From: Hyphochytrium catenoides
Lineage: Eukaryota; Protista; Hyphochytriomycota
Assembly (NCBI GenBank): GCA_900088475.1
Contig: FLMG01000464.1
Coordinates: 1-37,274 of the forward strand
Length of the DNA: 37,274 nt
Direction of reading: 5' to 3'
The translations under genes and the position numbers were made by a program. This document shows positions 666 to 36,811 of the stretch, one piece after another. The notes beneath the pieces are model-generated. The model had not been told where the DNA came from and ran no database searches. It worked only from the letters and a program-made list of their open reading frames with translations. Position 1 is the stretch's first letter, and each line of letters begins with the position of its first letter.

Positions 666-3153
666 ATGTCTGCAGCCACCGTCCTGAGACGACTTGGAGG
701 CAGAGGACTGGCAGCAGGTCTCTGGCACCAGGCTCGTACGCTGAGGCGCTCATACATCCCCTCCCTCTCAGTCTGGAAGGCCAATGGATCCTATTCCTAT
801 GAGCTTGAGGAGTTCTCTCCAGCGGTGCCACTGGATCAGCTTCAAGTTGTCCCTCCCAAACATACTCCCGGGGAAGACCCAGGGCTGGACGTCAAGTTGA
901 CAGAGACCTTTCGCCTCATGTCGCCGTATATCAACGTGCATAGGGGCCGTATTATGGTGTTTCACGTCTGTGGGGAGGCCATAGAGGCTCGAAACTTCAC
1001 CAACTTAATGCAGGATATTGCGTTAGTGAGTACTCTGGGCGTGAAAGTGGTCCTGGTGCTCGGCTGCAGGCCGCAGATCAACTCGCGACTGTTCGCCAAA
1101 GGCATGAAGCCAGAATATGGGAAGCTTCGTCGCATCACGAATCCGGAGACGCTGGACGTTGTCAAAGATGCAGCGGTAAGCTGAGAAGAATAGAGGAGCA
1201 TCCTTCTTGATAACGAGGAGAAAAGAACAGGGCGCTGAAAAGACGACTAGGGTCAAGAGAGAGTGAGAACTGGCGCTTGTTATGTCTCTAAGCCCTTCCC
1301 TTCCCTTTCCTTCGTGTAGGGCTTCGTTCGTGTCCAGGTGGAAAGTGCCCTGACCTGTGGCGTGGTTAACGCGCCGGGAGCTGGCCATCGTCTGAATGTT
1401 ACCTCAGGAAACTTCATTATTGCCCAGCCGGTCGGAGTGCGCGAAGGAATAGATTATTTGTATACTGGGGATGTGCGGAAGATTAACACGGAGAAAATGA
1501 AGGCACTCCTGGACGCTGGAGACGTGGTTGCTGTCTCTAACATTGGATACTCTCACAGCGGAGAAGGTAAGCGATCAGTGGTGCTGAGATGTGAGCATTT
1601 TCTTCGTTATTTCTCAAGGCTCTCTCTATCACTCATCTCCTATTCAACGCTTCAACTGGATATTCGTTACCCTCTCTGCACGGACTCACCTCAATTGGCA
1701 TCAGGAAGGGTATAATCTCTCCTCTCGTTAACGGCTGCCGCTTATACTGTCATTCATACATTTGCCTGATGTCTGTTCCCTCTCCAGTCTTCAACTGCCA
1801 CTCAGAACAGATTGCGACACGATGCGCCATCGAGCTGCAAGCTGCTAAACTTATTTTCCTGCATGAGGGGGAGGAGGTGATGGATGTTAGAAGCGACAGA
1901 AGAGTGAACAACATGCCCCAGAGGTAGACCGCTGTCAATGTCTTTGCTTTGTTTGTCTGTTGCCCTCGCTATGTTTATGAGCTGCATCTTACAATTTTCG
2001 TTGGCTTTTCTAGCACTGCCAGAGAGTTTGTCGAGCGTTTGCGAGGCTCTAAGGAAGCCAACCGTCTTTTCATTTCTTATCTGACGGAAGGGGTGACCGC
2101 TTGCGCGAAAGGCATACAGAGGGTCCACCTTATCAACAGGCACAAGGATGGTACGGTCCTGTCACTCCTGCTCTCAAGGGAGCTATACTTCTGTCTTCAT
2201 TTCTCTGTCTTTTGCTCTCCTACTCAAGAGTTTAGTTCTGCAAGGGACAACCTTTTAGAAGCCCAGGTTTTACCATCCCAACCCGACGTAGTCCTATTCT
2301 TCTGTTAGTTTGTCTACCCTGGCCTCTTGGCACACTAGTAGCTTTCTTTATCTCTACAGGACGTTACTAATAGCACTCCGATATTTAGGTGCCATTTTAA
2401 TGGAGCTATTCACTCGAGACGGCCTGGGTCTCATGATCTCTGGAGATATCTATGATGGGATCAGAACAGCTAAAGATAGCGATATTCCAGGCATCATGCG
2501 GTTGATACAGGTATATATGTTGTCAGCCCCTCCTACCCTCACTCCCAAGCTCATCTCTACCTTCTTGCTGTCCAGCCGCTTCAGGCTCAGGGTCTGCTCG
2601 TGACTCGCAGCCAGGAATCTATTGAGACTGACATTCACAAGTTTTCCGTGTTTGAACGTGATGGTGCTATCCTTGCATGTGCGGCTCTGCACATCTATGA
2701 CGGGAATGTGGCAGAGCTGGCTTGCGTTGCCGTTGATGGTACTTACAGAGGAAGTGGCAAGGTGAGGAGGGCGCACGCGACTCTCTCTTCTTTCCATTTT
2801 ATGCGGTTCCGATAAATTTCTCGTGTCCGCAGGCCTACTTCTCACCACCTTCTTCGTACAGCTACGCCCTGCCTGAATGTAAGCTTTACGACTTATTTCG
2901 TTTATTGCAGGGTAACGCTTTGTTAGGTTACATGCTAAGGAAAGCTCACGCTCTGGGAGTAGAGAAAGTTTTCGTGCTAACTACCCGCACCTCCCATTGG
3001 TTTGTGGAGAGAGGCTTCCAGCCAGCGAATCTATCTGATCTCCCTGCCAGCAAGAGAGAGCAAGTGGATGTTAGAAGGAAGAGCCGTATCTACATGATGG
3101 ACATACAGAGCCAGCGGGCCATTGATGAGAGAGAACTGATGATGCAGCTCTAG
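666..3153 (+). CDS. argA: Amino-acid N-acetyltransferase / N-acetylglutamate synthase (classical AAK + GNAT ArgA type), 7 exons, with an Arg-rich N-terminal presequence
   Basis: Exons 666-1175, 1320-1566, 1788-1923, 2014-2150, 2389-2510, 2576-2761 and 2911-3153 join in frame through GT-AG introns. Motifs SPYINVHRG, GCRPQI, GVREGIDYLYTGDVRKI, RVHLI, ELFTRDGLG, AELACVAV and FVLTTRTSHWFVERGF match E. coli/plant-type ArgA. An in-frame TGA at 633-635 supports the ATG at 666. Confidence 0.95.
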
Positions 3154-3581: not shown

Positions 3582-6500
3582 TTAAGCCTTTAGGCGGTAC
3601 TGAAAAATAGCTCTCGAGCGGGAGCTGACTGCTAAGAGAAGAAGTCCATTCTGCGTAAACTTGCACTGCGAGACAGGAGACGCAAAGCCGTAGTATTGAG
3701 GGTCATGGTCCTACATCTTACAGTTAGACACAGAATTGACTAGGAAGCAAAAGGCGGCCCTCGACAATATATTCCCAAAACGCCGGTCGACCCACGTGAG
3801 TCCAGACACTTACCTCTGCTTTAAGAACGGGATACCAAGAGAGCCCCAATGAGCCGTCCATTTCTCCGTAAGCAACAAGAACTTTGTCTGGAGAGCGTTC
3901 CACCGCGGTGGGTGGTTCAACGGGTTCCGTGGGCCAGAGACCTTGGACTGGCCAACCAACTGGGCAACTCCAACTGGACCAGGAGACATCTCGAACTGAC
4001 ATCAACTGCTTTATAGCGGAGCCTGTCTCCATGTCCCCTATAAAGATACACAAGGGCAGAAGGGCGGACTGGGATCAGGAGGCATTATTTTCCAGCACAG
4101 GCTGACTGCTATAAGCTTATGTAGGCTTCAGGTTTAGTATCGCCACGGCACCACGCCTCGAATAGACCGAACGAGCAGAGGCAAGTAGGATCGGAAGCGT
4201 ACGTTTAACATCACTTACAGAAACGAAGCTCATACTTCGCGTCCGAGCTCTGCAGCACCTTAGAGTTTGAGGAGAAATCGAGAGAAAGGATCCTCTCATT
4301 GTGACCCTGAAAGCAGTCCAGATTTAGACTTTATATCTGCTATGAAAATTGCCTTTTCCTCAGCTCTGCCGTACCAGACAACTATTCTTCAGTACATAGC
4401 TGGGGACATCAAACAAAAAGATCCCGCCATCTTCTACCCCAGCGGCCAAAGTATGACCATCCGAGGAGAATCGAAGGCAGACCACGGGGTGACTGGGCCC
4501 CTTGGCAGTCGCTACCTGCTTCTCTAGGCTTGACATGAAGACCAAAACCTAGAGGGACGACCGCACAGTTATTAGCTATAAGGGAATGTAGCCAGTACAC
4601 CACAGGGCTTCGCAAGCAGGGAAATGAAACTCAAGGGAGCGAAGAATAGTCCAGAGCGGCGCCCATACCTGTCCGCCCACGCTGCCTACAGCAATGTGAA
4701 CTCCATCGCTTGAGTACGCCACACTCTTAGCCCGGCATGAGGTATGTCGCCTGGCAAGGATTTGCCTGCGGACAGTACGAAAGCAAGAGTGGACTTCTAA
4801 GGGAAGAAATTGAAAGGGCCTTTATAGCAGACAATCATCCGATCGGTAGTATAGAAGCGGGCTGCTGTTCCCTTGTCCGTCTCACCTGCCATACGGATCC
4901 CAGACTTTGAGCTGCTCATCCTCTCCTACCGTAACAAACTCTTGCTTTCGAGGGTGGACAGCCAGAGCGACAAGCTCCCCTCGTGAATGCCCCTGCAGAG
5001 CAGTTTCAGAGGTTCGAAAGACGGTTTAAGGGATGGATGGTCTGTTGTTGGACCGAGACAGAGAGGAGACATGTCGTGCAGGTGGAGAAAAGTCGTAAGG
5101 TCATGTGGGAGGAACGAGAGGACGAGGGACCTAAGGGACCTATCTTCATATGGCATTTTACCTCTAAAATTCTTTGGCAACATCCAGATGAGGAAGACGA
5201 AGTAGTGTCTAGCTGTAGCAGCTCGCCGCCCTTAGTCAGTGTGAGCAGGTACTTCCCTCTGCAAGAGAGGGAGAGAATGCACGGCTCAACAGGAACATCT
5301 TTAAGAATAGTTCCGTCCAATAGGTTGAACTCTTTCAAACGCTGTGCGACAGAAATGGTAAGCGTTATCACCCGGCCTTACGAAGTTTCCATAAAAGGAG
5401 CCATTTGAGGTGACATATGTCCTTAAACGGACACCCTAGACTGGATATAAAGCGAGAGAGGAACATTTGCTCTAGTGGCCAAAGCCCTAAGGGGAGAGCC
5501 CATGTGACTCGCATTCTTAACGACATACTTACCGCCAAGTTTCTATCCCAAAGGGTCACCTTCCCGTCGACTCCACCTGAAACTACACCTTCCCCTCCTG
5601 AGAGAGGCGAAAGGGCGCGGATTGGACCCTACAAAGTAGAGAAGCTTATAGTGACCGTGCAGGACGATAATGTGGAACGGACAATACGAAAAGTAGGTGC
5701 GTCGTGGGTGAATACATGAGGAGTAGACCTCGTGCCTTAGTGGCGATAGCCCAGTGCAGAAAAAGAGAGAAGTGGTTGTCATTCATTCTCTACCTTATGT
5801 GCCATTGTGGTGATAGCGCATGTCTTGCCCTTCCACATGTAAAGAGAGCCATCTGCCTGTGCCGTCACCACATCCGGACCCAAATGGATCACCACAAGAG
5901 AGACACCCTCAGCGTTGCCCTTCTTCCCAAAGATTCCCCTCTTCCCTAGCAGGCTATTTCGCGAGATCTCCCTAACAAAAGCGATAACACACCAAGCACA
6001 ACGTTGCAGATTGAGAAGTGGCATTTCGAGGATGAGATGGGAAGAAGGGATTGACTTAGTGTGGGGGTTCTTACCAGAAGCGTACAGTCCGGACTCCGCA
6101 TGTAACTATCTCGTCCCCTCGGAAGGAAAGACTAAGAATCTATAGAAAATGGCGTTAGGTTGTCAGTCTAGGTGGTCTCTGCCACTACTATTCCATCTAC
6201 TACGCAGGTTTATGCCTCTGCCGGCTCACGTTTCAGCCCTACTTGACGAAGACTGCATCCTTGCTTTACCTTTTCATGACTGAGCACTGCGGTGGCCACC
6301 TTGTTACCATCAGTCTTATGAACAGACAGGCAGGTTCTACTTTCTCTGCCAAAGGAGTAAGAGACAGAAGCAACTTTGTCTCCTGCTCGCTCTCCTCCTC
6401 CTTCCGATTCATTAAACTTGACCATGGTGATGGGGCCAAGGTGCTCTCCAGTTATGGAAAGAATTGGTGAACCGCTGAAGGGATCCCACAGCTGAACCGA

Positions 6501-9500
6501 TGGAGGATCAGCTGCATCTCCAGTTGCTATTAGGTGACCCTTGTAGAATGGAGGATGTCAGACTAAACGAACATACGATTATACAAAGAGAGGAGAACAG
6601 AGGAAGCAAAAAGAAATGCGAGAACTTCCAAACAATGGCGGTTACTCCAAAGGATGACGAAAAATCTCGCTTAAAAATGAGGTCGGTAGCAGGGTGAGAC
6701 CAGGGGCAATGGTACGTTCCTACCTGGGGATGGACATCCATGCATGTGATTTCTCCTTCGTGCTCTGTGTATAGGATCTGAGTTTGGGAGGATGGAGAAA
6801 GGACCACAGCCACGCCGGCCAAAAAATAGCAAAGGCTGAGAGATTCATCCAGATAGTGAACGGATCTGGAGGCGTATTGATTGGGAGCCCCGTACACATA
6901 TTGGAGCTCCAAAGAAGGAGTGGGTTTTCTCTCCTTCTCGTCTAGTTATCCAACCGGGTCCAAGCAAGAGCGAGTAGTGCCGGAAGTGACGACAAGCGCA
7001 CAGAGTCAGCTTGGAGACTATTGGAGACTAACTCAACAGGAAGAGGGGACCCTTGGCCCGTGACAATGAAGGTTACGTGAATAGAATAGAGGACCAGGAT
7101 GCAACAGATCCTCATTGTGGAGACTAAAGAATTGACCAGGGAACATGTCGTTATAGCCAACAAGTGCAGGCTCTACCTTTTTCAGGCTTGTAGTCGCTAG
7201 GCTCTCTTACAGACGCTAACCAGGGTCTGTTATGGTGGTCGAAGTCCCTCCCTTTCGCCCTTGCCTTCCGAAGGTGCCGCTCTGCATCTAGTAGCTCTTC
7301 CAGGACTATTTGGGATCGCAATAAGAGAAAAAGATCGACACAGTGGTTAGCTGGAGCTAGCGACTATAGTGTCAAGAGATGAAGATGACGAGGCGCAAGC
7401 TCAATCCCAAGCTGCCGAAACCTAGTGGATACCGCCTTCCTCTGGCGTTTTGTATAGCCGAAATGGCCCTCACCTGTTTCCGTATGAATGCCAGGGGCTT
7501 CTCTCAAATCAACAGCTACCTTGACTTCTCTATTTGTCTCCTCCATGTCGGTCCTCCACTAAGGCATCGCAAAAGCAAGTAAGGGTCAGGTTGTGGCGGT
7601 TCACTACTTCCGTAAAATTGCGGACGAGACGGCAGGATGAACTGAAGAGTGCCCGCTAGAAGGACAATGGCTCCGTATAGATAAAGGTTGACAGCCAAGT
7701 GGGCGAGAGAGGATGGCTTGGCTTAGTATATCGGGCCAGGGCACGGATTGTAAGAAGCGCTGAAAACCTAGACAGCAATGACGACAGATCTTAATGGACT
7801 TGTATACAGATGCCACTTGCTCAAACCTGCAGGATGCAACCATCCATTGCCACCGAAATAAGATATTTATCATCGCGAGAGTAAGCCAATGCGGAGACGG
7901 ACGCAGCGTGACCAGAGAAGCACTTCTGTCCATTTCTGGAGATGCATGGATAGCGATAGAGCGAGACATCGCCATTCCGCTCCCCTGCTTCGACAGTGCC
8001 ATTAGAACTCAAAAAATTCACAAAGAGGACAGCTTGCCAAGTGGATGACTACAACTCTTAACAAGCTAATGAGTCTGAGAATAGAGAGGGCGAAGGTGAA
8101 CCCAGCAGTTATCGTGGCACCCACCAATAGCAAGTAGTGGAGTAGCAGATGTTCCTCCTTCCGTATTACTCCTTGCAGCACAAGACGGAAGTGTCGTTCC
8201 CTCCTGATCGTAGAGGCCTTGGACCGGCCAACCTACGGTTGAAGTCTGCCCACATGGGAAAAAAGGTTAGCAGTCGGGGGCATCACACCCCACAGGCGAG
8301 AATAGATCGGAGTAATAGCAAGGCTTCAGATTTTAACGCAGAAAAAACACAGAGGACAGACAGAGGGCCGTGGCGCTTATGAACTCCCATGGCGCTCGGT
8401 TCACGTTAATTTTACTTCCGTTTGCTTAGAATGCTTACCCAGCTCGCCCACGTAACGTCCCTAGCTTGAAGGTCAGAAACCTCCTTCGAGCCATCAGCAG
8501 TCCAGTAAGAGATTTCCTTGTCGCCACTAACAGCCTGGAGGACTGAGGAGTCTGCAGCCCAGTCGATGTGCTGGACGTACGAAAAGGAGCGGGGGAAAGG
8601 ACAAAAAATCTCTCGAATGAGCTTGTATGCGACCCCTCCTGCTACTGAATACAGCCGAAGGCCGCCATCGTGGGATCCCGTAGCCAGCAAAGAAGACGAA
8701 GGGGAGAAGCAGAGAGATTGACACCATTTCTTGGCCTCCGTAAGTTCACAGACACGTTCGAGGCCTTGTCCTTTGCGCAGAAAGATTATTACGGGACCAG
8801 ACAGGGTGCCAACAGCGAGATGCACTGAACCTGTTATTGCAGAAAGGAGGTCAATCCGTTAGCGAACAGAGTACTTTATTGTTTGCCAAATACCGAACAA
8901 GAACAACGACTAAGAACGTAGAGAAAGATGTCACCGTATTTGTAGAGATACAGGGGTAATGCGGTCTCAATGTCTCTACCCTCTTTGTCCACCGCCATGG
9001 TGGAGTAGCAGAGTGTCCTTGGCTTTCTCCCAACGTGTAGAAGAAAGCAACATTTCTTTTCCTTCATATCCCAAAGTCGAATTGTTCCATCATGACTCGA
9101 TGAAGCAAATTCTGGGGTCAAAGGGTGAACTGCTAAGCCCCATACCTCCCTCGAGTTGTGATGAGAGAATAGCTGTCGGGCATTTGCAGAGAGGCGTTCC
9201 GAAGGAGGAGGTACGTTAATTTGGTCACGAGAGACTTCTTGGTCTAAATCGGTTTAACATCGAAGAGTAGAAGGTAAGCTCACCTTCTGAATCCTTTCTT
9301 TACCCTTCGCTTCGTCCTTTGCTACTTCTAAAGCGTGCCCTGCCGATGTCGCGGCAAGTAGTCTACCTTCAAAGTATGAGAGACTAAAAGAAGCCGAGTG
9401 AGAGGCAGATAGGCATATAAGACGAAAAGAACCGAACCAGAAGAGTATCAAGGAGAGCGCACGACTTAGGAAAATGTAGTACCTTCTAATAGCAGCTTCG

Positions 9501-12500
9501 GGCAATGTATTCGATCCCTTTAACTTCCCTATATCTACCTTCGCTGGACTATCCGTCTGCGCTGGCTCGCTTGGCCCAGAAACTCCACCTTCGGTGGATA
9601 GGTTAAAGGTATTTAAAAGAATAAGTGGCCTCTTGCTGTCTTTCGCACGTTTTGACGCCATCGTTCCACTTTCTCGGGTACCACTACTGTTAGAAAGCGG
9701 CAGCTGCCACATGTGGACTACGGCATCGTCTCCGCCTAAACAGTCAAGCAAGACAAGCATCAAGAAAGACCGAGTCCAAAGTTTTTAGATCACTCAGCTG
9801 TTACATCACTCAGAAAGATAGTTGTGCAGGACGATAACGAGTCTCTACAAAAGACACCGAAGCAGATGCACCTATACAAGTATACCCGCACATTAATAGA
9901 TAGTCTATTGGCCCCTCTAGCCACCAATGGGCAATAGGGTCAGAGCTATGGAGCAATAAACGAACTTCAAGGAGGGAGTAAGGTGAATCTGGGAAAGGTA
10001 ATCATGACTTCGCTCAGAGAGTCCGTCGCACCTGTCAAAAGTAGGGTATCAACCGCATACATTGTAAGCACTTTGCCAACGTGCGCGGCCTCAACCACTG
10101 CCACAGCGCAGTGGCCCAAGCAGTCCCAAACTAGGAGGTCCCCTGTTGCCGTGCCTGTTACAAGTTGCCTTCCTACTGGTTGGGCGGACAAAGACTGACT
10201 TGACGGGAGAGTGTTTGGAATGATTCCCTGTCAATGACAAAATGTGTGAGGCGGGAGTCGTATAGCGGTAAAGACCAAAATGCTTTCTTCCTTTTACTCT
10301 AAAAGCCCTATATAGTGCTCCTGTATCCTTGAATCTCTTTCAACCGATAAGCCGCCTTACCCTCCTTCTGTTGAGGTTTTTGCTGCCTTGAGAATATGAC
10401 CAGAAAAGGACTTCTCCCGGCTGGCAGGTCACGAAGGAGGAGAAGCCAGGAAGAAAAGTAAACGCATACACTGGGCCGGAGCAATTCTCTGCTTGAGCAA
10501 TAAGATGCCGATTCTTCCAATCATACAGTGAGACTGATGGACAACCAATGTGAAAAGAGGGACGGCGTAGCGTGGTTAGATGCCGGGAGCAGTTTCGTGC
10601 TTTGCCAGACTTGTTCGTCGGTGAATCGATAGCTGCACGGTTCTGAGACTCTTTGTCCAGTACCTGTACTCCACTGATCTAGCCCCACGGCAAGCAGTAG
10701 CTCGCCATGTTGCCCCTCAAACGTCAGAAGTGCAACACCGCAATTCTTCGGCCCATCGAAGGTGCTCAATGTTTGCAAGGTCTCAGAGGACCAGACGCGA
10801 ACGGAAGCTTTATGGCAAACAGAGCCAGTCGCCACTAGCTGACGGTGAGGATGCACAGCCAAGCTGGCAAGATTTATTTGGAGGATGAGACGCAGAAGGA
10901 AGAGGATACGTATGACAATTAGGTTCCAGAAATATCTGAGATCAAGAACAACCAAAGCGAAATATAAGAAGAGAGAAAGAACTATAAGCGCGCAGAGCGT
11001 TAATCAGCACGTACTCAGCATAGGTGAACACTACCTATGAAATCTCTATGGCGTACAAAGAGGTTTAGGAGATAATACCAAGAAGGGAGAGTGTACTCAC
11101 CATGTAATCTCTCCCTCGTGTTGTGAGTAGAAACTTTGTGTCCATTTCACTCGATCTGTCAGCACGGCTAGCCGACCGGCAGGGTGCACTGTGCTACTGC
11201 TCCCTTGAAGGTATTGCAAATTACCTCGACTTACAGCCGAGTTGTGACCGTAGGACCACTCGAGAGCCATACTTGAGTCAGGAGGGTCGCTAAAGAATCC
11301 AAAAGAAGGAGTTGAGAATCATCCATACCAAAATTGGAGGAGACAAGGGCAATGAAATCTTTAAAGAGCTCCTCATGGCATAGCAGAGACGAAAGTACTA
11401 GCCAGCATCGTCACGCACATGGCCCGGCGAACTCCTATCTATATAGTAACAAGATTGACCTTTACCTGAGATCCTTTGTGTAAACGAACTTGGTGGGCTC
11501 AAGAAATGCAGCAAGAGCCCTGGTGTTAGTACTTCTCTCATTCTCCACTGCAGCAAGCTGCGGAGGTAGCGCGTCTAGATTCTTTGCCAAAAAGAGGTGA
11601 GGACACCACTGTACAGGCTATCACGACCAAACCAAGGAAGCCAGAGCAAAGAGCAAGCTGTACATGACCCGAGAAATGAGCGCTCAAGATAAGAGCAGTA
11701 CGTAAATTGACTTTAGCGCTCATAGAGAATTAAGAAGCAGGAACAAGAAGTAGGAACGAGAAAACGCGTCAAAGGTGAGGTTTGAACAAGTTTCCCATTG
11801 GGCAAAGAGATCCAGCTTCTTACGTGAAGGTTTGTAATCCGGGTAGGTCGCAAGGTTGAGCTGTCTTCTTCTTGTTCTGCTCTGTCCCTCCTCCAGACAA
11901 GAATACAGCCATCCTATACGCGGAGAGTACCCGTTCCGGAGTGAGTTTGTTTGGTATGAAGTTTGGCATTAACCTCTTCGTTAACGAAGTTTCATGGTAC
12001 CAAGATCTTTTCTTACCTCGCCTCCTGAGATTAGAAAGGCGTCATTCGAGCTAAAGCAAAGTGCAGTCACGGCACCGTGATGCCCGTTATACTCCTAAGT
12101 AACCCAACATATGTGTAGAAGATGCCGTGAAACACTTTTCAGGAAGGATACCAAGACACATATGCAAATAGGAACGAGTCTTGCCGATATTGAGAAGGAA
12201 AACTGGATATATGTCGATTGGATGCATCGGTGTAAACAGAAGAAGGGTTTCAATGGTACGGTTGTGCAGAGCTTGTTACTGTGAGCCCTTAAAGCCATTA
12301 GGCGGTTCTAGGCAGAAGTAAGTAGCCGAGAGGGGTGTTTACCATTAATGCCATGCCCTCTACCGGAGCTGGAGATCGATAGACCACTATTTTGCCGCTG
12401 TGCAAGCCGACGACAGCAATCTCACGGTCGCGTGATCTTACAACAGAACTAATCCTAGTGCCCCATCTGCTGGCGTCCCCATGAGGGCCTACAGAAATGG

Positions 12501-15500
12501 TCCCGGCATCGTTGTCGACTTGTAAGGTATAAGATTCACCAACAAGAGCAGCTGTGATAGTAACAAGAACGAGAAGATCATCTGTGCATGCCAGCGCAAT
12601 ACATTACTAATGCGACCCAAAGTCGTTGAAGAGTAATAATTGTGCTCGCGGAAGGAGAGAGGGCAGATTCCTGATGGCAAAGTGGAGAGCACAAAGCAAA
12701 GAGAACGGAGTTGGCAATAAAAAGTTACGAGAATGATACCCTTAATCTCCCAGCCAATGCGGAGTGTATATGACATCCATTGAATATCCTTTGCCACCAA
12801 AGGGCTCAATGCGCACCCAGTCTGAACTTCCCAGAAGTACAAATGACTTGCAGAGGCTTTGACAGTTGATAGGGCAAGGGAAACAACGAGGAAAGAGAAG
12901 GGGACAAGACGGGGTACTATTAGCGTGACCACTATCTTGTGTGGTTGTCGTCGTGCTTCTTGTGCTTCAGCAACCTTTTATACACCTCCCTGTTGCCATC
13001 AGCAACTACTTTCGTGACAACAAGGTACCTCTCCGATATCACTCAAGCCTAAAGGTTCATCTTTTTAAGTTCTCGCCGAGAGCACCTTGCCTATGTAATT
13101 AGCTCGCTAACCTACGTAGCACTTACATGTCTGTAGGTGTTTGGAGTCCACAGAGAAGTCAAGTCGCTGGATTGCTTCAGGGATGGCAGGAACACAGACG
13201 CTGCACTTACGCAACTTCAGGGCCTAAAGGAGGCATGAGAAATGGGGGCAATATGTTTGCAGTTACTTGTGGAATCAGTGCTCCGAACCTTTCCAGCTGC
13301 ATTGACATTATAAATATGGATGCAGCCCTGGGATGACACGGCAAGGTAGTCCATTGAGGGTGAGAACTTGATGTCAAAAATTGGGGACTCGGTGTGCTGA
13401 AAGGAATAAGGTTCCTTCTCCCCGTGAAGGTTCGAAGGAAGGAGTAGAACCTGGACGTGAATCAGTGTCTTTGTTAGAACGACGGTTAGATTGGTGGCAC
13501 AAGATGATATGTAGCCGCAGAAGAAGACAAGCCTAGGAATTCGAACGGCAAAATAAGTTGTAGAATCCAAAGATTGATAATAACGTATCAAGTAGCGCAG
13601 GTACCACTCCCTCTTCTGTCCCAACCACTATGTGGTTTCCGTCGCCTGAGTAACTGAGGCAGCAGGGAGTGTACACCAGCACCTAGAGGGATAAAGGCTG
13701 AGCGAGCAGTGCCAGGACGAAGCCACGTGCTAAGCTAGGAAAGGCCGCGCTCTAAGAGGTGAATGCCAGATGGTGGAGGGAAATCTTGCCAAAAGATTGT
13801 AATGAAGGATGGAATTTTAGAATGAGGAGCAACATTCACGAGTTGTGTCCCATTCTTTGGGGGCATCGCTCACAAGATGCTTATAAGGTAGAGGCGCAAG
13901 AAGGAGCAAACCTTGGTTGCCAAACAAATCTGCGTACGCAAGCTCCACACGCGGACTCTCTTGTCATCTCCACAGGAGGCATATTCAGGCTAGTTATAGC
14001 AAGGCGTCAGACGTTTCTGGGAGGTTGAGGAAAGGATAAACTCAAACGAAGTGTTGAGGGTTATTGCCGTTTGTCCAGCCTCAGGAGAGATTGAGAATAG
14101 GTGAGGCTGGGAAGTAGGACCAACCTTGAGTGGGTGAGCCGCGATAGCCCTGACCGCACCGTAACAGTGTCCTTGAACCAATTGGTATACCTCTCCATTG
14201 CCCTCGTCTGCCTGTGGATTGGAATCAAGGGTTCAGATAGCTGGTCCAAGTTATAAGAGATCTATAGGCTTAACGGTTCCATTTTAGTTAGGGGTTCTTT
14301 TGCAGGAACATCAGGTGTGCCCGAAAGTGTACGAGTGATAGCCACAGCTGTGGCAAGCAGTGCTTGGTGAAGGAAGAGAGAGCTGATGGAGCCGCTGACC
14401 TCGTAAATTGAACTGGTACGAGTTCCGATGAGAAGTTTTTTGCCATCTGCTCGACCAGCCAGAGCAGTAATTCGAGGCGTCGTGCACTGTGTAGTGTCTG
14501 CCTTCAACTTGGACAAGTAACTGGGAAGAGAACAGCAAGCCAAGCCATAGAGGTTAGAAGGGGTCAAAGTCCAAATGAGAGGGTAACATAATCTGCAGGT
14601 GAGCGAAGCGACCTACAATGTCGGAGTCCGCCGAGCAAGATCTATAGGCTTTCCAATGGATCGAAGGGTTCGATCCCAATAGTGGACAACCCCATCTCGA
14701 CCTCCAGTTACTATTCCCCCAGCTCCTTCCAGGACAAGGAGGGATGTCACGCTCTCCCTTTCCTTATGAGCTTGAACGCATTTGTCCACCTTCCTCTTTC
14801 TCCCAGAGACGAGAAGGAGCTCACCACTCACGCTTCCGACAAGCAAATCCTCTCCAAGATACGCGGAGCAGGTGAACGTCTGGAGCTTTGACATTGATCC
14901 CACCGTGACGCGATGAGGCCGCAACGAGCGTCCCTCCACACTATAAATAGAGATAAACTAGACATGCTTCAGATACTAAGAGTGCGTCAGATGGACCTGC
15001 GGGTAGTTGTCGGTGCTATAGGCTATACCAGATGCTCTAGCTTACGATCAAGGACGGCAAGCACGCAGTGGATGTACGCAGCATAAGGTCGGGAAGCTCC
15101 AGATGGAAGCTCTAAGACGACAAAGGGGGGTATACCTTGACTCCAACGACGGCGATTTCGTTGCCTCGAGAATGGATAGAGATGCTTAGGATCCGCTCTG
15201 ACGGGCCACGGCCGGAAGCAATAAGCGCACCGCTGGCCCAATCCCAGAGCGAGATGAGTTGGGGCGACCCTCGGCTTACCTACGAAGCCGGGTAGTCATT
15301 GTTGGTGTATTAAAAAAAGTATGGGTCAGACTCTCGATAGATGACAGCATACTGATGGATAGGGTTGACGTAATAGGGAGATCGAAAAGATTCCAGGTCT
15401 TACCGCAGCGAGCCTTAGGCCGTCCGGAGAGAACTCGAGGAAAGCAATGTCACCGCCTAGTCCCCCTCTTATGATCTTCTCGCACTTCATCTCCCTCTCC

Positions 15501-18059
15501 CTTTTCCCTTCATCTTTGCCGTTTTCTACTACTTTCCAGATGTGCACTTCATCAATTGACGCACTAGCGATGAGATTCTGAGTGGGATGGGCTGCTATGG
15601 CAGTGACCAGTGCTGAGTGACCCTAATATATCACGTGGGAGTAGTGAGACTTGACTGCACCTTTGATGCAGTGACGACATAGAGGGAACGAGCCGCGTCT
15701 GGACGAAAAGTTTAAACGTCTCCCAATAGACATGTAAATATAAAGAGGAGAACAGATCTGAAAGCAATTGGAAATGTATTGGCTTTTTCGCTGGATATAG
15801 GACGCGAATTGAATGCGTTGCAAAGTGACCTGATACTTCAGCTGCACGTGAGTAGCTTTGTCGTAAAGGAAGACAAAGCTTCCAGCAAAGTAAGCTAAGT
15901 CACGTCCGTTTTTGAGATAAATCAGGTTGTTTCTACATGACAGAATTGAAAAAAAGTCGGAGTAAGTTTGAGGACTTCAGGTTGGGACAATGAGCGATCT
16001 CTGGCCAGGGCAGGGTTATAGCCGTGTCCGTAGGCCCCTCTCAGCTGCCACAGAGCGTGGGCATGCCAAAGAGTAGAGTAGCATAGGCAAGATATATGGC
16101 AATTACCTGCAGTCAAAGGTCCGGTATCCGTGGACCCATTCCAGTACTAGATTCGTCTCGGGCCTCTGTCGAACTGCAATCCCGCAAACGTTGGTATCGA
16201 GAAGGAGACGTCATGGGGCATACCTTCTGGGTTTGGTGGACCAGGAAGAAATGGAAATAACGCAGAGGCGGAGAGGAACGGAAGATACTTCACGGACACT
16301 CAGTCTCACCTTTTGCTTCATTTATTGAAAAGGCTGTGGGTTCTAAAGAAGCAGTAATCCAAGGAAACTTATCCACCTCGGATGGCAGTCTTTCGACCCT
16401 GTTCTCCTCTAACTTCTTCCCATGTCTTCTTCGCTTTGTGGAATGCGCCAGTTCAGCTTCCAGGTCTGAGTCCTCATTGTCCGTTAATTCTTCCGCGCTG
16501 TCCTGCTCTCGGCTAAGGAGAGGAGACGATGCTGACGAGCGAAGGGTTTCTGTGAAGTAAATGACTTCTTTGTTTCTCCTGGCCCATTCAACAAACTCAG
16601 ACAGGGAAATGTTGGAGGACTTGTCCTACAAGTTGAAGGCAGGATAAGACAAGAAAATTGAATCAGCTACTTCTGTACGTGAAGACATCATAGGACGAGG
16701 AGAGCAGCCGAGCCATTTGCAGCTGACAGAAGGGACAGCAGGAGCAAGAGTTGGAGATAGGGAAGGAAAGTTATAACGCTCATGGTATCAGAGAATCTAA
16801 CAAGAGGAAAGAGTTCGGCACAAAGGAAAAGCATCACCTTGTCACTAGCTACAAGCACATCCTGACTGATCTGGGAAAAGACTTTCTGAGGGATCTCAGC
16901 TTCTTTTTTCGCCATGGTGAAGTGAAGCAGCCCAACAAAGACTGCCTGCAGCATGACGGCCTTATGGTCATCATGGCCATGGAAGGAGAGGAGTGAGTGG
17001 TGCGGTCATGACGAGCAGGATGGGCATGAAGAAAAAGTCAGCATAATAGTTAATAGGAGTACGAAACAAGCTGAGATCGAAACCTCTGTCTTCAGAAACT
17101 TGCTATGCCTCCCGAATAGCGATAACAGCTTAGCTTTAAGGGTACTTACCAGCTCGGTGACGGAGAGCCCTCCGCTGAAGTTAAAGTCATAGAGAGAGAA
17201 CAGGACTGTGGAGGCGTTGAGTAGGCGGGTGTCAGACGCAGCTTGAGGGAGCGAGAAGACTTTCCGTACAGATTACTACTTCAAAAGCAAAGCTTACTTG
17301 TGCCGGTGGTGAGACAGAGAGGAAATGAAAGGTGGGGCGTGAGAAGAAGAGTGATATGACAGGTAGAGGAGTCGCCCTGATGGGTGAGGGACATATGAGA
17401 GCTTGTGCTAGAAGGAGCATGAGGTTGCCTGGCATTACTGACATTTGGCCTTGTCCTCAAAGCTTCCCCACGCAATGAGACAGAGCCCGGAGATGAAGCC
17501 CAGTCCATCAATGCGCCCATCTTTGTCTGTGTCTAGGGCCTGACTCCACCAGATTTATGGAAAGACGGACAGAACAAGGAGAATGGAAGAGTGCAACGGA
17601 AGGTGAAGGAATGGCGTTAGAGCATGGTTGCGAGCAGGCCAGGAAAAGATTGTGGAAACAATGCTAACGTGCTCCCCAAGGCCGTAGAGAGGAAAGGGGA
17701 CAAGGATGCAAATTGTGCGAGTGCAAAGCGGCATCGATGACCCAGCATCAAGAGATAAAGAGGATAACAACCTCAAACAGAGAGGCCACAGTTATTCCTT
17801 CCATTGGCTTGGTCATCAGAAGGGTCTCCAACTGTGACTCTACAATGGAGAAGCCGAACATCTTCTGATACTCCTTGTACAATGTTTCAAGGTCGGCGAG
17901 GCTCCCTGCAGAGGGTAAGCATTAGCTGATCTCATCTCGCCCTCCATATTCATAAGCTGGCAGAGACGGGCTTTGCTTACAGGCGAAGAAAGGCTGGGCT
18001 TCTCTCTTGACTGGCCCCACCAAAGTGAGGAGCTCCTCGGAGCTCTGACCAGCCCCCAT
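3582..18059 (-). CDS. EML5/EML6-like echinoderm microtubule-associated protein (three HELP + tandem WD40 TAPE units) with an N-terminal myristoylation motif and EF-hand module; many exons
   Basis: Starts MGAGQSSEE at 18059 and ends ...AIFQYRLKA* (TAA 3584-3582). There are three HELP motifs: PETNLVLEWVHGYRTFDCR/NNLIY (~16107-16165), PPDSSMALEWSYGHN (~11230-11290) and PTPSLELQYVYG (~6880-6925). EML-specific signatures recur: W.SW...GWPVQG (~3950-3990, ~8220-8450), WMSYTLRIGWEIKG (~12740-12780) and GH...V..L.FS.DD..LIS (~7860-7920, ~12020-12090). Not every exon boundary was resolved. Confidence 0.9.
16560..18059 (-). other. N-myristoylated EF-hand (recoverin/NCS/CBL-like) N-terminal module of the EML gene
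   Basis: Spliced translation gives MGAGQS..., then ALDTDKDGRIDGLGF (17498-17533, lacks E12), LYDFNFSGGLSVTEL (17153-17188, canonical loop) and SDK/DKSSNISLSEFVEW (split by an intron, ~16590-16850). Confidence 0.8.
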
Positions 18060-18280
18060 GGCTCCCAAAGTTCACGAACTCCAATGTTAGGCAAGAACCG
18101 CTAGCTGATGAATTCCTTAGGGCAGGTCGAGCTCTCTTGACAGCCACGGATGGGCCAATAATGAGTAAGCTTCATCTGCCGCTCGAGTTCTGAAGCTTTC
18201 CTTCAATAGTAGAGCTTGATGATCGAAAGACAGCGGCATTCTGAAGGATTGGAAGGTAGTTTACAGCCGAACTCGCGAAA

Positions 18281-20474: not shown

Positions 20475-21084
20475 CTACCCAGCTCCCGCCATTCCTGTTA
20501 TCAGCGGCGGTTCTTCAGTAGCACCAACTTGCGCTTCTTCTTGCTCATAGCATTCAGAACGTAGAGCGTAGTAAGCATTGGGGTCAAGGTGCTCCTGGAG
20601 ACAGACAATGTATGAGCAGTAGGTTCAACAGCGCAGCAGCCAGCAACAAGGGAAGCACTCAACCATTCGCCATTGGGCTTCGTTTTCTTCGCTCGCATCC
20701 AAGAAGACGGAGGAGGGACTGTGACGAGACAATCAAGATTTACTGATGGAACGAAACTCCTCTCCTCCTCTGTCTCGCTTCCGAAATGCGTCTATTCCAG
20801 GTTGACATTACCCTTGGCAGAGTCGCCCTAACCGGAGGACAGTACTAGAGACGGTTTTTAGTAACTGTAACGGGGTGATGGGTGCAGAATACGAATATAC
20901 TAGGGTGCATCAAGAAGCGTACTGTGTGACCAAAGGCCAACTGCAGAGACAACGCCACTGAATTTCTTAGACTGCGATCAACCTTTCACCAGCTTTCCTT
21001 TCACTTCTCACACCGACAGTCGCCTTGGTGTGCTTTCTCTCTCTCTCTCTCTNNNNNNNNNNNNNNNNNNNNNNNNNNNNNNNN

Positions 21085-25454: not shown

Positions 25455-27631
25455 TTACGCCTTGCCGTAAGAGGTACCAAACCATCGGTCAATGTGTGAA
25501 ATGTCGACCTCTAGAACTAGACTCCGAACGACGAAGACGTGGCTTCTGCTCTTCACATTTTCTGCCTCTCGCTTTAGTGCCGCTAACTCTACTTTCACGC
25601 GACATTTGCCCATATCCTCCAGCTCACCTAAACAAGTGGAAGACCAAACACGTGAGAGAGAGAATTCAAGTGATTAACAGTACAATGATCAGAGAGCTAG
25701 AGAGGTACTGATTATTGAAGTCCAACTAGAGGATGCGAAAAAGGATTATAAGAAAAGGCCGCGGGCGCAACAAGAACATTCTCAAAATGCTTGGAAGACC
25801 AACAGGCGCAACACTGGGAGAATAAGAGTTGCATGGTGAACTTGAGATTGGAAGCAGGAGTCAAGATGGGGCACCTTGAAGGACATTGTCTTCAACTCCG
25901 GCCGCCTCAAAGTCGAAGGAGGAGTCTCTCGTTCCAAGTTCAGTTTCTCTGTTGTCTCTCATCACAAGCAGACGGGAGAAGCTCCAAAAAATCTCTAAGT
26001 GTTCATCCCAGACAGTGACGTCCAGGACTAAGGTCTGAGGGACACTGATGGTGACGGAGTCTGTTCGCAAAGAAACAAAGGGCGAGCCATGAAGAGACCG
26101 AGTGATGTCGCGCACATAACCCTGGGTGATAGTGGACGTTAAAGTCGTGTCAATAGTATAGAGGAGTTGGGAATAATAGCACGTCCAGACGAAGAGGGTA
26201 AGGGCCAGCCCAGGGAAGGTTGCGGCGAAAGAAGACGGTTGAAAGAGGCTGGACAGGCGTTGGAAGTGAGAGAAGAACCAAATGTTGAGACTGGTTTGCC
26301 CTGACTTACCGAGGGAGAGAGAAGAGAGAAAACACAAGTCTTGGCACCCTTTGTTATTTCCTCCACCTGTCCCTTCACTTCTCTGAACTCCCTCTCCCAA
26401 GCGTTTTGTCCCAGTGATCTGATGCCAACCACGATGTGGAAACGATGCAAGCCATACAGAGGGTCAACGTCGTCAAGAATAGGAGTATGAGGTACGGGAG
26501 TAGGAGAACTAAGCAGATGTATGATGTCTGCGAAGTGGACCAAAAGGAAAAGAGACAGAACTTCGTGATCTTCTCCCCATTCAGCAAGGATGATGGAAGA
26601 CGAGGTAGGAGGAGAAGGAGACGAGGAAGCCGTGCTGTCTTCCGTAAGGAGGAACTGATAGATATTGACCATCGTGCTGTCATTGCTCTTGACAAGCACT
26701 TTCCACTTGTTCTTCTCCTTTCCTCCAAATATCTCTCCTTTTCTGCTTTGCCTTCTAACGGTCTCTGCGCTTAATGGTTCTCCTCTCCTTCCCTGCCAGT
26801 TCTCTATAGCTACAAGTCTCCTTGTTCTCTTGACTAGCGAGGAAGAGACGTCAACGCTTATCTGGTTGCAGTCGTACGCAGAAAGTTTAGGAGGAACCTG
26901 GCACTTGAGGATGAGAGAGGAAGTAAAAAGCCGAAGCTCCCTCTTTTCTAGCACTTTGATCAGTTCTGTGGGGTTGTTTGACCAGGATGCATCTTTGTCT
27001 CCTCTGTCCCGTCCGATCTGAGCTAACTGGCATGGCTGTTGATTGATGGAAATGTCAAAAGTAGGGTCCAGCAGTTCAACTATCCTTTGTTGACTTTGGG
27101 CTAAGCCTTTGCCTTTGATGGACCTGACTCTTGACTCAAAAGATGGCAACGTTTTCTTGGTTGCTCGCTGCTTTTTCTCTTCCGATGGCGCCCTACTCAT
27201 TTTTGCTGAATGTTTCTCCCTGTTCATTGAATCCGAGTGATTACTAGTGCTGGAGGAGATCGACCCAAACGAGCATGTGGAAGAAGGGCGTGACGAGATG
27301 TCCTCTTTCTTTCCCACTAGCGCTTCCTCGTACTTGTCGACATTCCATTCTGGTCTGTCCTCTTGTTCACTAATGTAGGTATACGAAGTCAGGGTCTGGT
27401 ACCATGGCCCTTAATGGACTGCCTTTACCTCGTGAGGGTACTCTTTCGCTGAACTTGAAGTTTGGAGCTTCTCGCCGCAGCCACCTCCTCCCTTAACCGT
27501 GTGACACTTGGCCTTTGCTTCCTATTCATGGCACTTTGCTGACGTCTCGCCGCCCTTGGCTCTGAAGCTCTAATGGACGGGTATTGGAGACGATGGCACT
27601 GCAGTTGAGGAGACCTTGGAGAGAATAGCAT
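25455..27631 (-). CDS. FBXO15-like protein (C-terminal domain homology, no F-box seen), 4 exons
   Basis: Exons 27631-27429, 27369-26310, 26121-25875 and 25627-25455 join in frame. Motifs PHTPILDDVDPLYGLHRFHI, LDVTVWDEHLEIFWSFS and SLVLEVDISHIDRWFGTSY parallel remembered animal FBXO15 motifs (PHSPFLDDSPEYGLHGY, MDVTLLDEHGKPFWCFS, NLVLYLSIAKINHWFGTEY). The start could be the downstream MNRKQ. Confidence 0.8.
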
Positions 27632-35071: not shown

Positions 35072-35125
<54 letters not shown>

Positions 35126-36159: not shown

Positions 36160-36271
36160 GGAGAGAGAGCCAGTGAGAGAGAGAGAGACAGAGAGAGNNN
36201 NNNNNNNNNNNNNNNNNNNNNNNNNNNNNNNNNNNNNNNNNNNNNNNNNNNNNAGAGAGAGAGAGAGAGAG
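36160..36271. repeat. (GA)n tract containing an assembly gap (N 36198-36253)
   Basis: Read directly. Confidence 0.9.
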
Positions 36272-36448
36272 GGAAGCGGGATGGAGAAAGCAGAACGAGG
36301 CTTTCATGATCCAGCAGCTCTTCAGCCCAAGAGAAGCAAGAGGACGGCGCTCGAAGGAGGGAAGGAATAGCTGAAGGAATACGGGGAATGATACTAGTGG
36401 CGGACCAGGGAGAGAAGGCGCAGCAGGAGACCAAGACAGAAGAGGCAG

Positions 36449-36751: not shown

Positions 36752-36811
<60 letters not shown>

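What the first reader, a model, noticed from the sequence alone, without database searches (positions are those of the whole stretch)
3582..18059. Myristoylated EF-hand calcium sensor fused to a triple-TAPE EML: candidate Ca2+-gated membrane-microtubule linker
Seen: one minus-strand gene starts MGAGQS (MGxxxS N-myristoylation consensus). It carries three EF-hand-like loops in a recoverin/NCS/calcineurin-B-like layout, then an acidic/basic linker, then three HELP+WD40 TAPE units. Established: animal EML5/EML6 have three TAPE units but no N-terminal myristoyl-EF module, TAPE domains bind tubulin, and recoverin-family sensors use a Ca2+-myristoyl switch. Inference: this single chain could tether cortical or flagellar microtubules to membrane under Ca2+ control. 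Similar fusions may already be annotated in other protists, but I know of no functional characterisation.
Basis: partly seen in the sequence, partly recalled or inferred. Interest (0 to 1): 0.7.

Follow-up and report, generated by a model that had tools for sequence, protein, structure and literature searches.

The report
NCS calcium sensor fused to EML
One real 14.5-kb gene joins a calcium-sensor domain, probably lipid-anchored, to three tubulin-binding EML units. The same fusion is conserved in over 100 stramenopile and ciliate proteins, and I found no study of it.

Summary
A minus-strand, multi-exon gene (18059 to 3582) starts MGAGQS. An in-frame stop lies 12 nt upstream of the ATG.

- **N-terminal module.** It has four EF-hands: EF1 is degenerate and three loops are recognisable. 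A profile of relatives matches the neuronal-calcium-sensor (NCS) family (KChIP, calaxin, GCAP, NCS-1, recoverin; E about 1e-20). The predicted fold matches myristoylated NCS1p (Z 13.8).
- **The fusion is real.** A single exon (16625-16310) carries the EF4 loop, an acidic linker and the motif that precedes the first HELP. Three HELP/TAPE units follow.
- **It is not unique.** 118 fetched proteins share the architecture, from oomycetes, thraustochytrids, bolidophytes, chrysophytes, a pinguiophyte and the ciliate Blepharisma. They carry only automatic names. Animal EML6 lacks the module.
- **Conserved features.** Gly2 is present in 75 of 80 colinear N-termini. The EF3 loop is canonical in every subgroup.

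The functional reading is only partly supported:
- This copy alone has Gly in place of the otherwise invariant Glu-12 of EF2.
- The linker is acidic.
- In animals TAPE binds soluble tubulin, and EML5/6 are not shown to bind microtubules.

I rate it a new variant of a known kind, of moderate interest.

The parts
18072..18074 (-). In-frame TGA stop, 12 nt upstream of the start codon
   Evidence: Read directly from the sequence. It leaves almost no room for an upstream coding extension that would remove Gly2.
17981..18059 (-). Exon 1: ATG, MGAGQSSEELL..., N-myristoylation consensus (Gly2, Ser6)
   Evidence: It matches the PROSITE-type pattern G-{EDRKHPFYW}-x(2)-[STAGCN]-{P}. The MG start is homologous to that of 75 of 80 colinear family N-termini. 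The donor is GTAAGC.
17772..17905 (-). Exon 2: degenerate EF1 region (FGFSIVESQLETLL) and the entering helix of EF2
   Evidence: It aligns without gaps to the family motif GFALVEAQFESI. tblastn of P0134 residues 29-77 hits here. The donor GTTGTT is weak; I chose it because it keeps the family's helix-loop spacing.
17443..17539 (-). Exon 3: EF2 loop DTDKDGRIDGLG, with Gly at position 12
   Evidence: Pfam EF-hand_5/6/1 hits are sub-threshold on this exon alone (E 0.012-0.16). 32 tblastn HSPs fall here. Position 12 is Glu in all 101 other aligned sequences.
17150..17205 (-). Exon 4: EF3 loop DFNFSGGLSVTE (canonical)
   Evidence: Pfam EF-hand_6 E 0.034 on the open stretch. Loop positions 1, 3, 5 and 12 are conserved in all subgroups of the family.
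16838..16960 (-). Exon 5: exiting helix of EF3, entering helix of EF4, first two residues (DK) of the EF4 loop
   Evidence: It aligns without gaps to the family at both junctions.
16310..16625 (-). Exon 6: rest of the EF4 loop (DKSSNISLSE), its exiting helix, a 61-residue acidic linker with a KRRRHGKK patch, and the pre-HELP motif FPWITASLEPTAF
   Evidence: One open frame of 111 codons. P0134 residues 168-253 align to it in a single HSP. Linker pI is 4.96 and net charge -5. This exon physically links the EF module to the EML part.
16107..16173 (-). Exon 7: first half of HELP motif 1 (LVLEWVHGYRTFDC)
   Evidence: Pfam HELP E 4.1e-7, 29.8 bits, above the 27-bit cut-off. The frame is kept from exon 6.
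15830..15932 (-). Exon 8: second half of HELP motif 1 (RNNLIYLKNGRDLAYFAGSFVFLYD...)
   Evidence: Pfam HELP profile positions 19-35. The exon ends in phase 0.
15404..15622 (-). Exon 9: first WD blade of TAPE unit 1 (GHSALVTAIAAHP...)
   Evidence: Pfam WD40 E 1e-4. Acceptor TATTAG and donor GTAAGA.
11800..16173 (-). TAPE unit 1 (approximate span; many exons)
   Evidence: HELP and Beta-prop_EML hits (E 2.6e-9 at 14616-14957). Colinear tblastn HSPs to P0134 residues 263-800. The exons of its second propeller were not scanned with Pfam.
7180..11318 (-). TAPE unit 2 (approximate span)
   Evidence: HELP E 1.7e-4 (11100-11318). Beta-prop_EML E 1.6e-10 (10524-11003). Beta-prop_EML_2 E 1.5e-24 (8415-8858), 1.3e-10 (8879-9253) and 2.5e-11 (7824-8048)..
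3582..6945 (-). TAPE unit 3 and the stop codon (3584-3582)
   Evidence: HELP E 6.7e-4 over profile positions 2-40 (6724-6945). Beta-prop_EML E 8.9e-4 (5782-6105). Beta-prop_EML_2 at 4885-5025, 4363-4548 and 3727-4074 (E 4.5e-13). The C-termini of P0154 and P0168 align to 3585/3588.

Best explanation
**Shown.** This is one genuine gene. It belongs to a conserved family, found so far in stramenopiles and ciliates, with this domain order:
- a four-EF-hand domain of the neuronal-calcium-sensor (NCS) type, about 190 residues long and starting at Gly2;
- an acidic linker;
- an EML6-type chain of three TAPE (HELP plus twin beta-propeller) units.

**Inferred mechanism.**
1. The N-terminal glycine is myristoylated.
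2. Ca2+ binds at EF3 and EF4. In this copy EF2 has lost its bidentate Glu.
3. Binding changes the NCS domain, as it does in other NCS proteins. That change controls exposure of the lipid and/or of a target-binding groove.
4. This in turn sets where, or whether, the three TAPE units engage tubulin or microtubules next to a membrane. The most plausible place is the cortex or flagellum of the motile stage.

Whether the ligand is polymer or soluble tubulin dimer is open. Architecture and family membership are near certain. The calcium- and lipid-controlled membrane-proximal function is a hypothesis.
For: **Gene structure**
- Nine GT-AG exons keep the frame.
- A single exon holds EF4, the linker and the pre-HELP motif.
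- A stop lies 12 nt upstream of the ATG.
- Eight full-length relatives align colinearly from N- to C-terminus.

**EML part**
- HELP, Beta-prop_EML and Beta-prop_EML_2 hits are found in three units.

**NCS part**
- A profile of 25 relatives matches KChIP2 at E 7.7e-21, calaxin at 3.6e-20, and also GCAP2, neurocalcin, NCS-1, CBL4, calcineurin B and recoverin, over nearly its full length.
- The AF2 model has pLDDT 85.
- The fold match to apo myristoylated NCS1p is Z 13.8 over 185 residues.
- The window's spliced N-terminus matches family N-termini at E 1.9e-42.

**Conservation**
- 118 fetched proteins have the module. One is a single-transcript model from Phaeomonas parva.
- Gly2 is present in 75 of 80 colinear N-termini. 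At least one of the other five (P0253) shows an internal MG after a short model extension.
- The EF3 ligand positions are conserved in all subgroups.

**Link to motile cells (weak)**
- All named hosts form flagellated or ciliated cells.
- Orthologues turned up in Phytophthora, Plasmopara, Pythium, Albugo and the Saprolegniales. None was listed from the non-flagellate downy mildews Peronospora, Hyaloperonospora or Bremia, which should have ranked near the top.
Against:
- EF2 of this copy has Gly where 101 of 101 relatives have Glu.
- In the quick tree its NCS module sits on a branch about ten times the median length. That is compatible with relaxed constraint.
- In the oomycete subgroup the EF2 and EF4 loops are degenerate, so full calcium sensing is not universal in the family.
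- Only 40 of 75 Gly2 N-termini fit the strict myristoylation pattern.
- The linker is acidic and lacks the basic region that binds microtubules in EML1-4.
- TAPE alone binds soluble tubulin and does not localise to microtubules, and microtubule binding by EML5/6 is unproven.
- The absence from non-flagellate downy mildews is a negative result from a search that filters by length and shared words.
Confidence: 0.5

Rival explanations
1. The NCS-like module is a constitutive lipid anchor or docking domain that no longer works as a calcium switch. The protein is then simply a membrane- or partner-tethered EML6.
For: - This copy has lost the invariant Glu-12 of EF2.
- It has a very long branch in the tree.
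- Oomycete orthologues have degenerate EF2 and EF4 loops.
- The model also matches the calcium-independent EF-hand region of dystrophin at Z 12.6.
- From general knowledge: several NCS proteins (NCS-1, GCAPs, KChIP1) do not use a Ca2+-myristoyl switch.
Against: - EF3 keeps Asp-1, Asn/Ser/Asp-3, Asn/Asp/Ser-5 and Glu-12 in every subgroup, including this copy.
- EF4 is canonical in this copy and in two of the three subgroups.
- Such conservation of ligand residues over very deep divergence argues for retained Ca2+ binding.
Confidence: 0.2
2. It is an axonemal or basal-body calcium regulator. The NCS domain would act on dynein or spoke structures and the propellers would dock on doublet microtubules. 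This resembles calaxin or CFAP251 rather than a membrane linker.
For: - Calaxin is among the best sequence matches (E 3.6e-20). It is an axonemal NCS protein reported to bind beta-tubulin and outer-arm dynein (PMC4415241).
- A language-model neighbour search listed CFAP251 clusters that carry EML-type propellers (a lead only).
- All named hosts make cilia or flagella, and no orthologue was listed from non-flagellate downy mildews.
- An EML4-like gene is specific to the flagellate haploid stage of Emiliania (PMC2784329).
Against: - Calaxin lacks the myristoylation consensus, whereas Gly2 is nearly invariant here.
- The similarity to calaxin is no greater than to KChIP, GCAP or NCS-1.
- Searches by protein name found no match in the oomycete flagellar gene list or in a zoospore membrane proteome. 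The locus tags were not known, so this is weak evidence.
Confidence: 0.15
3. It is a membrane-tethered binder of soluble tubulin dimers. It would act as a local tubulin store or delivery factor released or activated by calcium, not as a tether for polymerised microtubules.
For: - Isolated TAPE binds soluble tubulin tightly but does not localise to microtubules.
- EML5/6 lack the microtubule-binding N-terminal region.
- The linker here is acidic.
Against: - There are no data on EML6-type proteins in any protist.
- Three TAPE units in one chain could bind along a protofilament.
- This rival overlaps the best explanation and differs only in the ligand.
Confidence: 0.1
4. The EF-hand exons and the EML exons are two adjacent genes that were wrongly read as one.
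For: - There is no RNA evidence for this genome.
- Reading through the exon 6 donor reaches a stop after six codons, so an unspliced product of about 274 residues is formally possible.
Against: - Exon 6 itself contains both EF4 and the family-specific pre-HELP motif.
- All junctions keep the frame and align to relatives without gaps.
- The fusion is present in 118 proteins, including transcriptome-derived ones.
Confidence: 0.03

Closest known systems
Animal EML5/EML6 (triple-TAPE echinoderm microtubule-associated protein-like proteins)
   Same: Both have three consecutive HELP plus twin-propeller (TAPE) units in one chain of about 2000 residues or more. Neither has an N-terminal coiled-coil trimerisation domain. 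Identity to stramenopile members over a TAPE unit is 33-37%.
   Different: Animal EML6 starts directly with HELP, as do the triple-TAPE proteins of Diphylleia, Mantamonas and Fabomonas. They have no NCS module and no Gly2.
Neuronal calcium sensor family (recoverin, NCS-1/frequenin, hippocalcin, neurocalcin, GCAPs, KChIPs) and relatives calcineurin B, CBL and CHP
   Same: All have a compact fold of about 190 residues with four EF-hands, an inactive EF1 and an N-terminal Gly2 with a myristoylation consensus. Profile E-values are 1e-20 to 1e-12, and the fold match to NCS1p is Z 13.8.
   Different: Those proteins are free-standing and act on separate targets. Here the domain is covalently joined to its presumed effector. 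EF1 lacks the Cys-Pro signature. In this copy EF2 lacks Glu-12, so at most EF3 and EF4 are canonical, whereas recoverin uses EF2 and EF3 (general knowledge).
Calaxin (EFCAB1), the axonemal NCS protein of opisthokonts
   Same: It is an NCS-type sensor that works on a microtubule-based machine, and it is among the top sequence matches (E 3.6e-20).
   Different: Calaxin is not myristoylated, is free-standing, docks on outer-arm dynein, and was reported as opisthokont-specific (PMC4415241).
CFAP251/WDR66 (radial-spoke-3 base protein)
   Same: It combines EML-type beta-propellers with an EF-hand in a ciliary protein (a lead from a language-model search, plus general knowledge).
   Different: It has one propeller pair, I know of no HELP motif in it (not tested here), and its EF-hand is not an N-terminal NCS domain. 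I did not test the relationship by alignment.
Trypanosome calflagins/FCaBP (acylated flagellar EF-hand proteins)
   Same: They are N-acylated EF-hand proteins whose flagellar-membrane association depends on calcium. This comes from general knowledge and was not checked here.
   Different: They are small free-standing proteins with no tubulin-binding domain.

Membership tests
EML family | HELP motif at the start of each TAPE unit | tested here: met
   Pfam PF03451 hits at 16106-16210 (E 4.1e-7, 29.8 bits against a 27-bit cut-off), 11100-11318 (E 1.7e-4) and 6724-6945 (E 6.7e-4, profile positions 2-40).. Only the first passes the curated cut-off on its exon alone.
EML family | Tandem atypical beta-propellers (Beta-prop_EML followed by Beta-prop_EML_2) | tested here: met
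   PF23409 hits at 14616-14957, 10524-11003 and 5782-6105. PF23414 hits at 8415-8858 (E 1.5e-24), 8879-9253, 7824-8048, 4885-5025, 4363-4548 and 3727-4074.. These are exon-by-exon scores; the whole-domain score was not computed because the joined model was not submitted.
EML5/EML6 subtype | Three TAPE units in one polypeptide, with no N-terminal coiled-coil and basic region | tested here: met
   Three units, as above. The N-terminus is an NCS fold and the linker has pI 4.96. I did not run a coiled-coil predictor.
EML1-4 subtype | N-terminal trimerisation coiled-coil followed by a basic microtubule-binding region | tested here: not met
   The N-terminal 188 residues align to NCS proteins, and the 61-residue linker has net charge -5.
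Neuronal calcium sensor (NCS) family | Compact domain of about 190 residues with four EF-hands and NCS-specific sequence similarity | tested here: met
   A profile of 25 relatives' N-termini matches KChIP2 at 7.7e-21 and NCS-1 at 7.4e-18 over profile positions 13-197 of 205. Fold match Z 13.8 over 185 of 189 residues of 2l2e. The window's own spliced N-terminus was tied to that profile's members only by local blastp (E 1.9e-42).
Neuronal calcium sensor (NCS) family | N-terminal myristoylation consensus (Met-Gly-x-x-x-Ser/Thr) | tested here: met
   MGAGQSS fits G-{EDRKHPFYW}-x(2)-[STAGCN]-{P}. Gly2 is present in 75 of 80 family N-termini. Actual lipidation cannot be tested here.
Neuronal calcium sensor (NCS) family | Inactive EF1 | tested here: met
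   The EF1 region (FGFSIVESQLETLL) has no recognisable loop in the window or in the family. The Cys-Pro signature of animal NCS proteins is absent.
Neuronal calcium sensor (NCS) family | Functional Ca2+ loops at EF2 and EF3 | tested here: inconclusive
   EF3 is canonical. EF2 has Gly at position 12 in this copy only. EF4 is canonical except for Ser at position 6. Binding itself cannot be tested here.
Neuronal calcium sensor (NCS) family | Free-standing protein of about 22 kDa | tested here: not met
   The domain is the N-terminus of a protein of more than 2000 residues. I therefore file it as an NCS-type domain, not as an NCS protein.
Recoverin-type Ca2+-myristoyl switch | Myristate is sequestered in the Ca2+-free state and extruded when Ca2+ binds | not testable with these tools
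   The AF2 model resembles the closed apo form of NCS1p, but residues 1-12 have pLDDT below 50. No inference can be drawn.

The most novel reading that the evidence does not exclude
The NCS-EML6 fusion family is a calcium- and myristoyl-controlled coupler built into a tubulin-binding scaffold. It would operate at the membrane-microtubule interface of flagella or the zoospore and ciliate cortex, would be retained only in lineages with motile cells, and would translate Ca2+ signals directly into changes in the microtubule cytoskeleton. That would make it the first case of a neuronal-calcium-sensor domain hard-wired to a microtubule-associated protein.
Probability: 0.22. Interest if true: 0.65.

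Novelty: new variant of a known kind. Interest (0 to 1): 0.45.

Why it matters
EML proteins and NCS proteins are each well studied in animals, but only as separate molecules. In this family the sensor and the tubulin-binding scaffold are one chain. The family spans oomycete plant and animal pathogens, thraustochytrids, several algal classes and at least one ciliate, and its members carry only automatic names.

- If the calcium and lipid control is real, it offers a direct route from Ca2+ signals to microtubules. Ca2+ signals govern zoospore swimming, encystment and chemotaxis in oomycetes.
- It would give a tractable handle on what triple-TAPE EML5/6 proteins do. That question is still open in animals.
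- The window's own copy is a natural variant with EF2 disabled, which is useful for comparison.

If the module is only a passive anchor, the finding is still a tidy example of domain fusion, but of limited reach.

Tried and rejected
- **Pfam on single EF exons.** This gave only sub-threshold EF-hand hits (E 0.012-0.16), because introns split the motifs. The joined spliced model was not sent to any search, family or structure tool. It was assembled only inside local scripts, for blastp and MAFFT against proteins already fetched.
- **The one HMMER representative search.** Generic multi-WD40 proteins dominated it. Only nine long hits with few matched stretches were worth following.
- **A home-made exon-chaining gene finder.** It over-called intronic open frames and mis-cut exon 1. 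I discarded it, so exons beyond number 9 are given only as spans.
- **Literature.** No paper describes the fusion, and five locus tags of orthologues occur in no indexed text.
- **Oomycete flagellar gene list and zoospore membrane proteome.** Searched by protein name only, without a match. The relevant locus tags were unknown, so this says little.
- **The look-up of encoding contigs on a neighbouring ORF.** It found nothing, so the organism was not identified directly.
- **Protein Atlas search.** It gave only language-model neighbours (CFAP251, WDY, 'DNAAF10'), which I did not test.
- **Considered and rejected.**
  - A two-gene model.
  - An upstream start.
  - A donor three bases further downstream for exon 2. 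It would insert a residue that breaks the EF2 helix-loop spacing seen in all relatives.

Full report
**Observation**

The window is eukaryotic, about 49% G+C and intron-rich. On the minus strand an ATG at 18059 opens MGAGQS. An in-frame TGA lies 12 nt upstream.

I defined nine exons by hand. All have GT-AG borders and all keep the reading frame:
- 18059-17981
- 17905-17772
- 17539-17443
- 17205-17150
- 16960-16838
- 16625-16310
- 16173-16107
- 15932-15830
- 15622-15404

The spliced N-terminus has this layout:
- **EF1:** a degenerate region.
- **EF2:** loop DTDKDGRIDGLG.
- **EF3:** loop DFNFSGGLSVTE.
- **EF4:** loop DKDKSSNISLSE. This loop exists only after exons 5 and 6 are joined.

Exon 6 is a single open frame of 111 codons. 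It runs from the EF4 loop through a 61-residue linker to FPWITASLEPTAF, a motif that in all relatives sits just before the first HELP. The fusion of the EF-hand part to the EML part is therefore visible within one exon.

**EML part**

Pfam scans of individual exons, given by reference, found the following.
- **HELP:** three hits, at 16106-16210 (E 4.1e-7), 11100-11318 (E 1.7e-4) and 6724-6945 (E 6.7e-4).
- **Beta-prop_EML:** three hits, at 14616-14957, 10524-11003 and 5782-6105.
- **Beta-prop_EML_2:** hits in units 2 and 3, the best being E 1.5e-24 at 8415-8858. I did not scan the second propeller of unit 1.

Eight full-length relatives align colinearly from about residue 29 to their last residues, across 17903-3585. 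The frame ends at the stop 3584-3582.

**Relatives**

The single HMMER search of the representative library, with the 148-residue exon at 8415-8858, was dominated by generic WD40 proteins. It did yield long EML-like hits.

Three of these have about 260-335 residues ahead of the first HELP, and all three start MG: P0134, P0039 (Phytophthora fragariaefolia) and P0042 (Aphanomyces invadans). Three word-indexed searches seeded from them gave many more. Local blastp counts 118 fetched proteins with the N-terminal module.

Named sources:
- **Oomycetes:** Phytophthora (eight species), Nothophytophthora, Plasmopara halstedii, Globisporangium, Pythium, Albugo, Aphanomyces, Saprolegnia, Achlya and Thraustotheca. 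The Plasmopara protein is annotated 'putative guanylate cyclase activating protein', which is an NCS name.
- **Other stramenopiles:** Hondaea (thraustochytrid), Triparma (bolidophyte), Tribonema (xanthophyte), Chlorochromonas, Pedospumella and an ochromonad (chrysophytes), and Phaeomonas (pinguiophyte; a transcriptome model).
- **Ciliate:** Blepharisma stoltei.

Triple-TAPE proteins of animals, Diphylleia, Mantamonas and Fabomonas start directly at HELP and lack the module.

The window's spliced N-terminus matches family N-termini at E 1.9e-42, colinear over 11-215. In a quick maximum-likelihood tree of the module (105 rows; two rows shorter than 150 residues were left out), it falls inside the clade that holds Phaeomonas and the chrysophytes, with SH-aLRT 99. 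Its branch is very long, 2.18 against a median of 0.19, so its exact place is unsure.

**Nature of the EF module**

- A profile of 25 relatives' N-termini (alignment A1) matches solved structures over nearly its whole length: KChIP2 (E 7.7e-21), calaxin (3.6e-20), GCAP2, KChIP4, calsenilin, neurocalcin, NCS-1, hippocalcin, CBL4, calcineurin B and recoverin.
- An AlphaFold2 model of P0134 residues 1-205 has mean pLDDT 85.
- Foldseek ranks hippocalcin, GCAP1, calcineurin B, KChIP and NCS-1 first.
- The second-look aligner gives Z 13.8, rmsd 3.5 Å over 185 residues, to apo myristoylated NCS1p.

The window's own joined sequence was not submitted to these tools. Its link to the profile rests on local alignment.

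**Conserved features that bear on function**

- **Gly2.** Of 80 gene models whose N-termini are colinear with the queries, 75 have Gly2. The other five carry short N-terminal extensions, at least one with an internal MG (P0253). Forty fit the strict PROSITE-type myristoylation pattern, and the window's MGAGQSS fits it.
- **EF loops, across 107 distinct sequences.**
  - EF3 keeps its ligand positions in every subgroup.
  - EF2 and EF4 are canonical in the window's subgroup and in the Hondaea/Triparma/ciliate set. They are degenerate in the oomycete subgroup.
  - Glu-12 of EF2 is present in all 101 other aligned sequences but is Gly in the window.

This copy therefore retains at most two canonical loops, EF3 and EF4.

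**Points against the stronger reading**

- The linker is acidic, with pI 4.96 and net charge -5. This is unlike the basic region that confers microtubule binding on EML1-4.
- Published work states that isolated TAPE binds soluble tubulin but does not localise to microtubules. It also states that it is unclear whether EML5/6 bind microtubules (bioRxiv 10.1101/466979).
- A Ca2+-myristoyl switch is a property of some NCS proteins only. Calaxin, for example, lacks the lipid consensus (PMC4415241).

**Link to motile cells**

All named hosts make flagellated or ciliated cells. In the TAPE-region search, orthologues from Phytophthora (82-88% identity) and Plasmopara (73%) head the list. None comes from the non-flagellate downy mildews Peronospora, Hyaloperonospora or Bremia, which nest among them. 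This is suggestive only, because the search filters by length and shared words and lists 120 of 642 hits. An EML4-like gene is specific to the flagellate haploid stage of Emiliania (PMC2784329).

**Verdict**

The gene and its architecture are real and conserved. The family is already in public databases under automatic names. In eight of the ten permitted full-text searches I found no paper that describes or tests it.

The mechanism I favour is a lipidated NCS domain that makes a triple-TAPE tubulin binder responsive to Ca2+ near a membrane of the motile cell. I put this at about 0.5 as a whole, and the architecture itself at above 0.9. The rivals are:
- a calcium-insensitive anchor;
- an axonemal regulator of the calaxin/CFAP251 kind;
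- a tether for tubulin dimers rather than polymer;
- a two-gene artefact, which is very unlikely.

Earlier notes of this scan call the genome stramenopile-like and mention potassium channelrhodopsins. I did not verify the organism, but the family's distribution agrees with a stramenopile origin.

Noticed in passing
window 17443-17539 (minus strand): Glu-12 of the EF2 loop is invariant in 101 other family sequences but is Gly (codon GGC) in this genome. In the quick tree the whole NCS module sits on a branch about ten times the family median. This could be real divergence or a sequence error.
   Followed up: partly
window 666-3153 (plus strand): The neighbouring multi-exon gene has a weak amino-acid-kinase hit (PF00696, E 0.0012 at 666-1181). 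By eye its C-terminal exon looks like the acetyltransferase end of N-acetylglutamate synthase, but that exon gave no Pfam hit.
   Followed up: partly
window 29996-31819 (minus strand): Two long open frames have helical-repeat character and one weak PPR hit (E 0.0029). This may be a pentatricopeptide-repeat gene.
   Followed up: partly
window 21053-21084 and 36198-36253: There are two assembly gaps (runs of N). Both are flanked by GA/CT dinucleotide repeats, which also occur at 34241-37274. These repeats produce spurious 'ERERER' and 'SLSLSL' open frames.
   Followed up: yes
window 26142-27317 (minus strand): A 392-codon Ser-rich open frame has no Pfam match and no exact entry in the gene-position index.
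   Followed up: partly
window 18104-18175 (minus strand): A short upstream open frame (MKLTHYW..., 24 codons) lies about 45 nt ahead of the main ATG. It could be a regulatory uORF if the transcript starts upstream of it.
   Followed up: no
proteins P0262, P0270 and P0252 (relatives, not the window): Some orthologue gene models are much longer: Albugo laibachii 3741 aa, Thraustotheca clavata 3797 aa, and Pythium oligandrum 2839 aa with a Na/Ca-exchanger Pfam entry. These are probably merged neighbouring genes, but I did not check.
   Followed up: no
proteins listed: No orthologue from Peronospora, Hyaloperonospora or Bremia appeared among the top hits, although Phytophthora and Plasmopara orthologues did. 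These three are downy mildews without flagella.
   Followed up: partly
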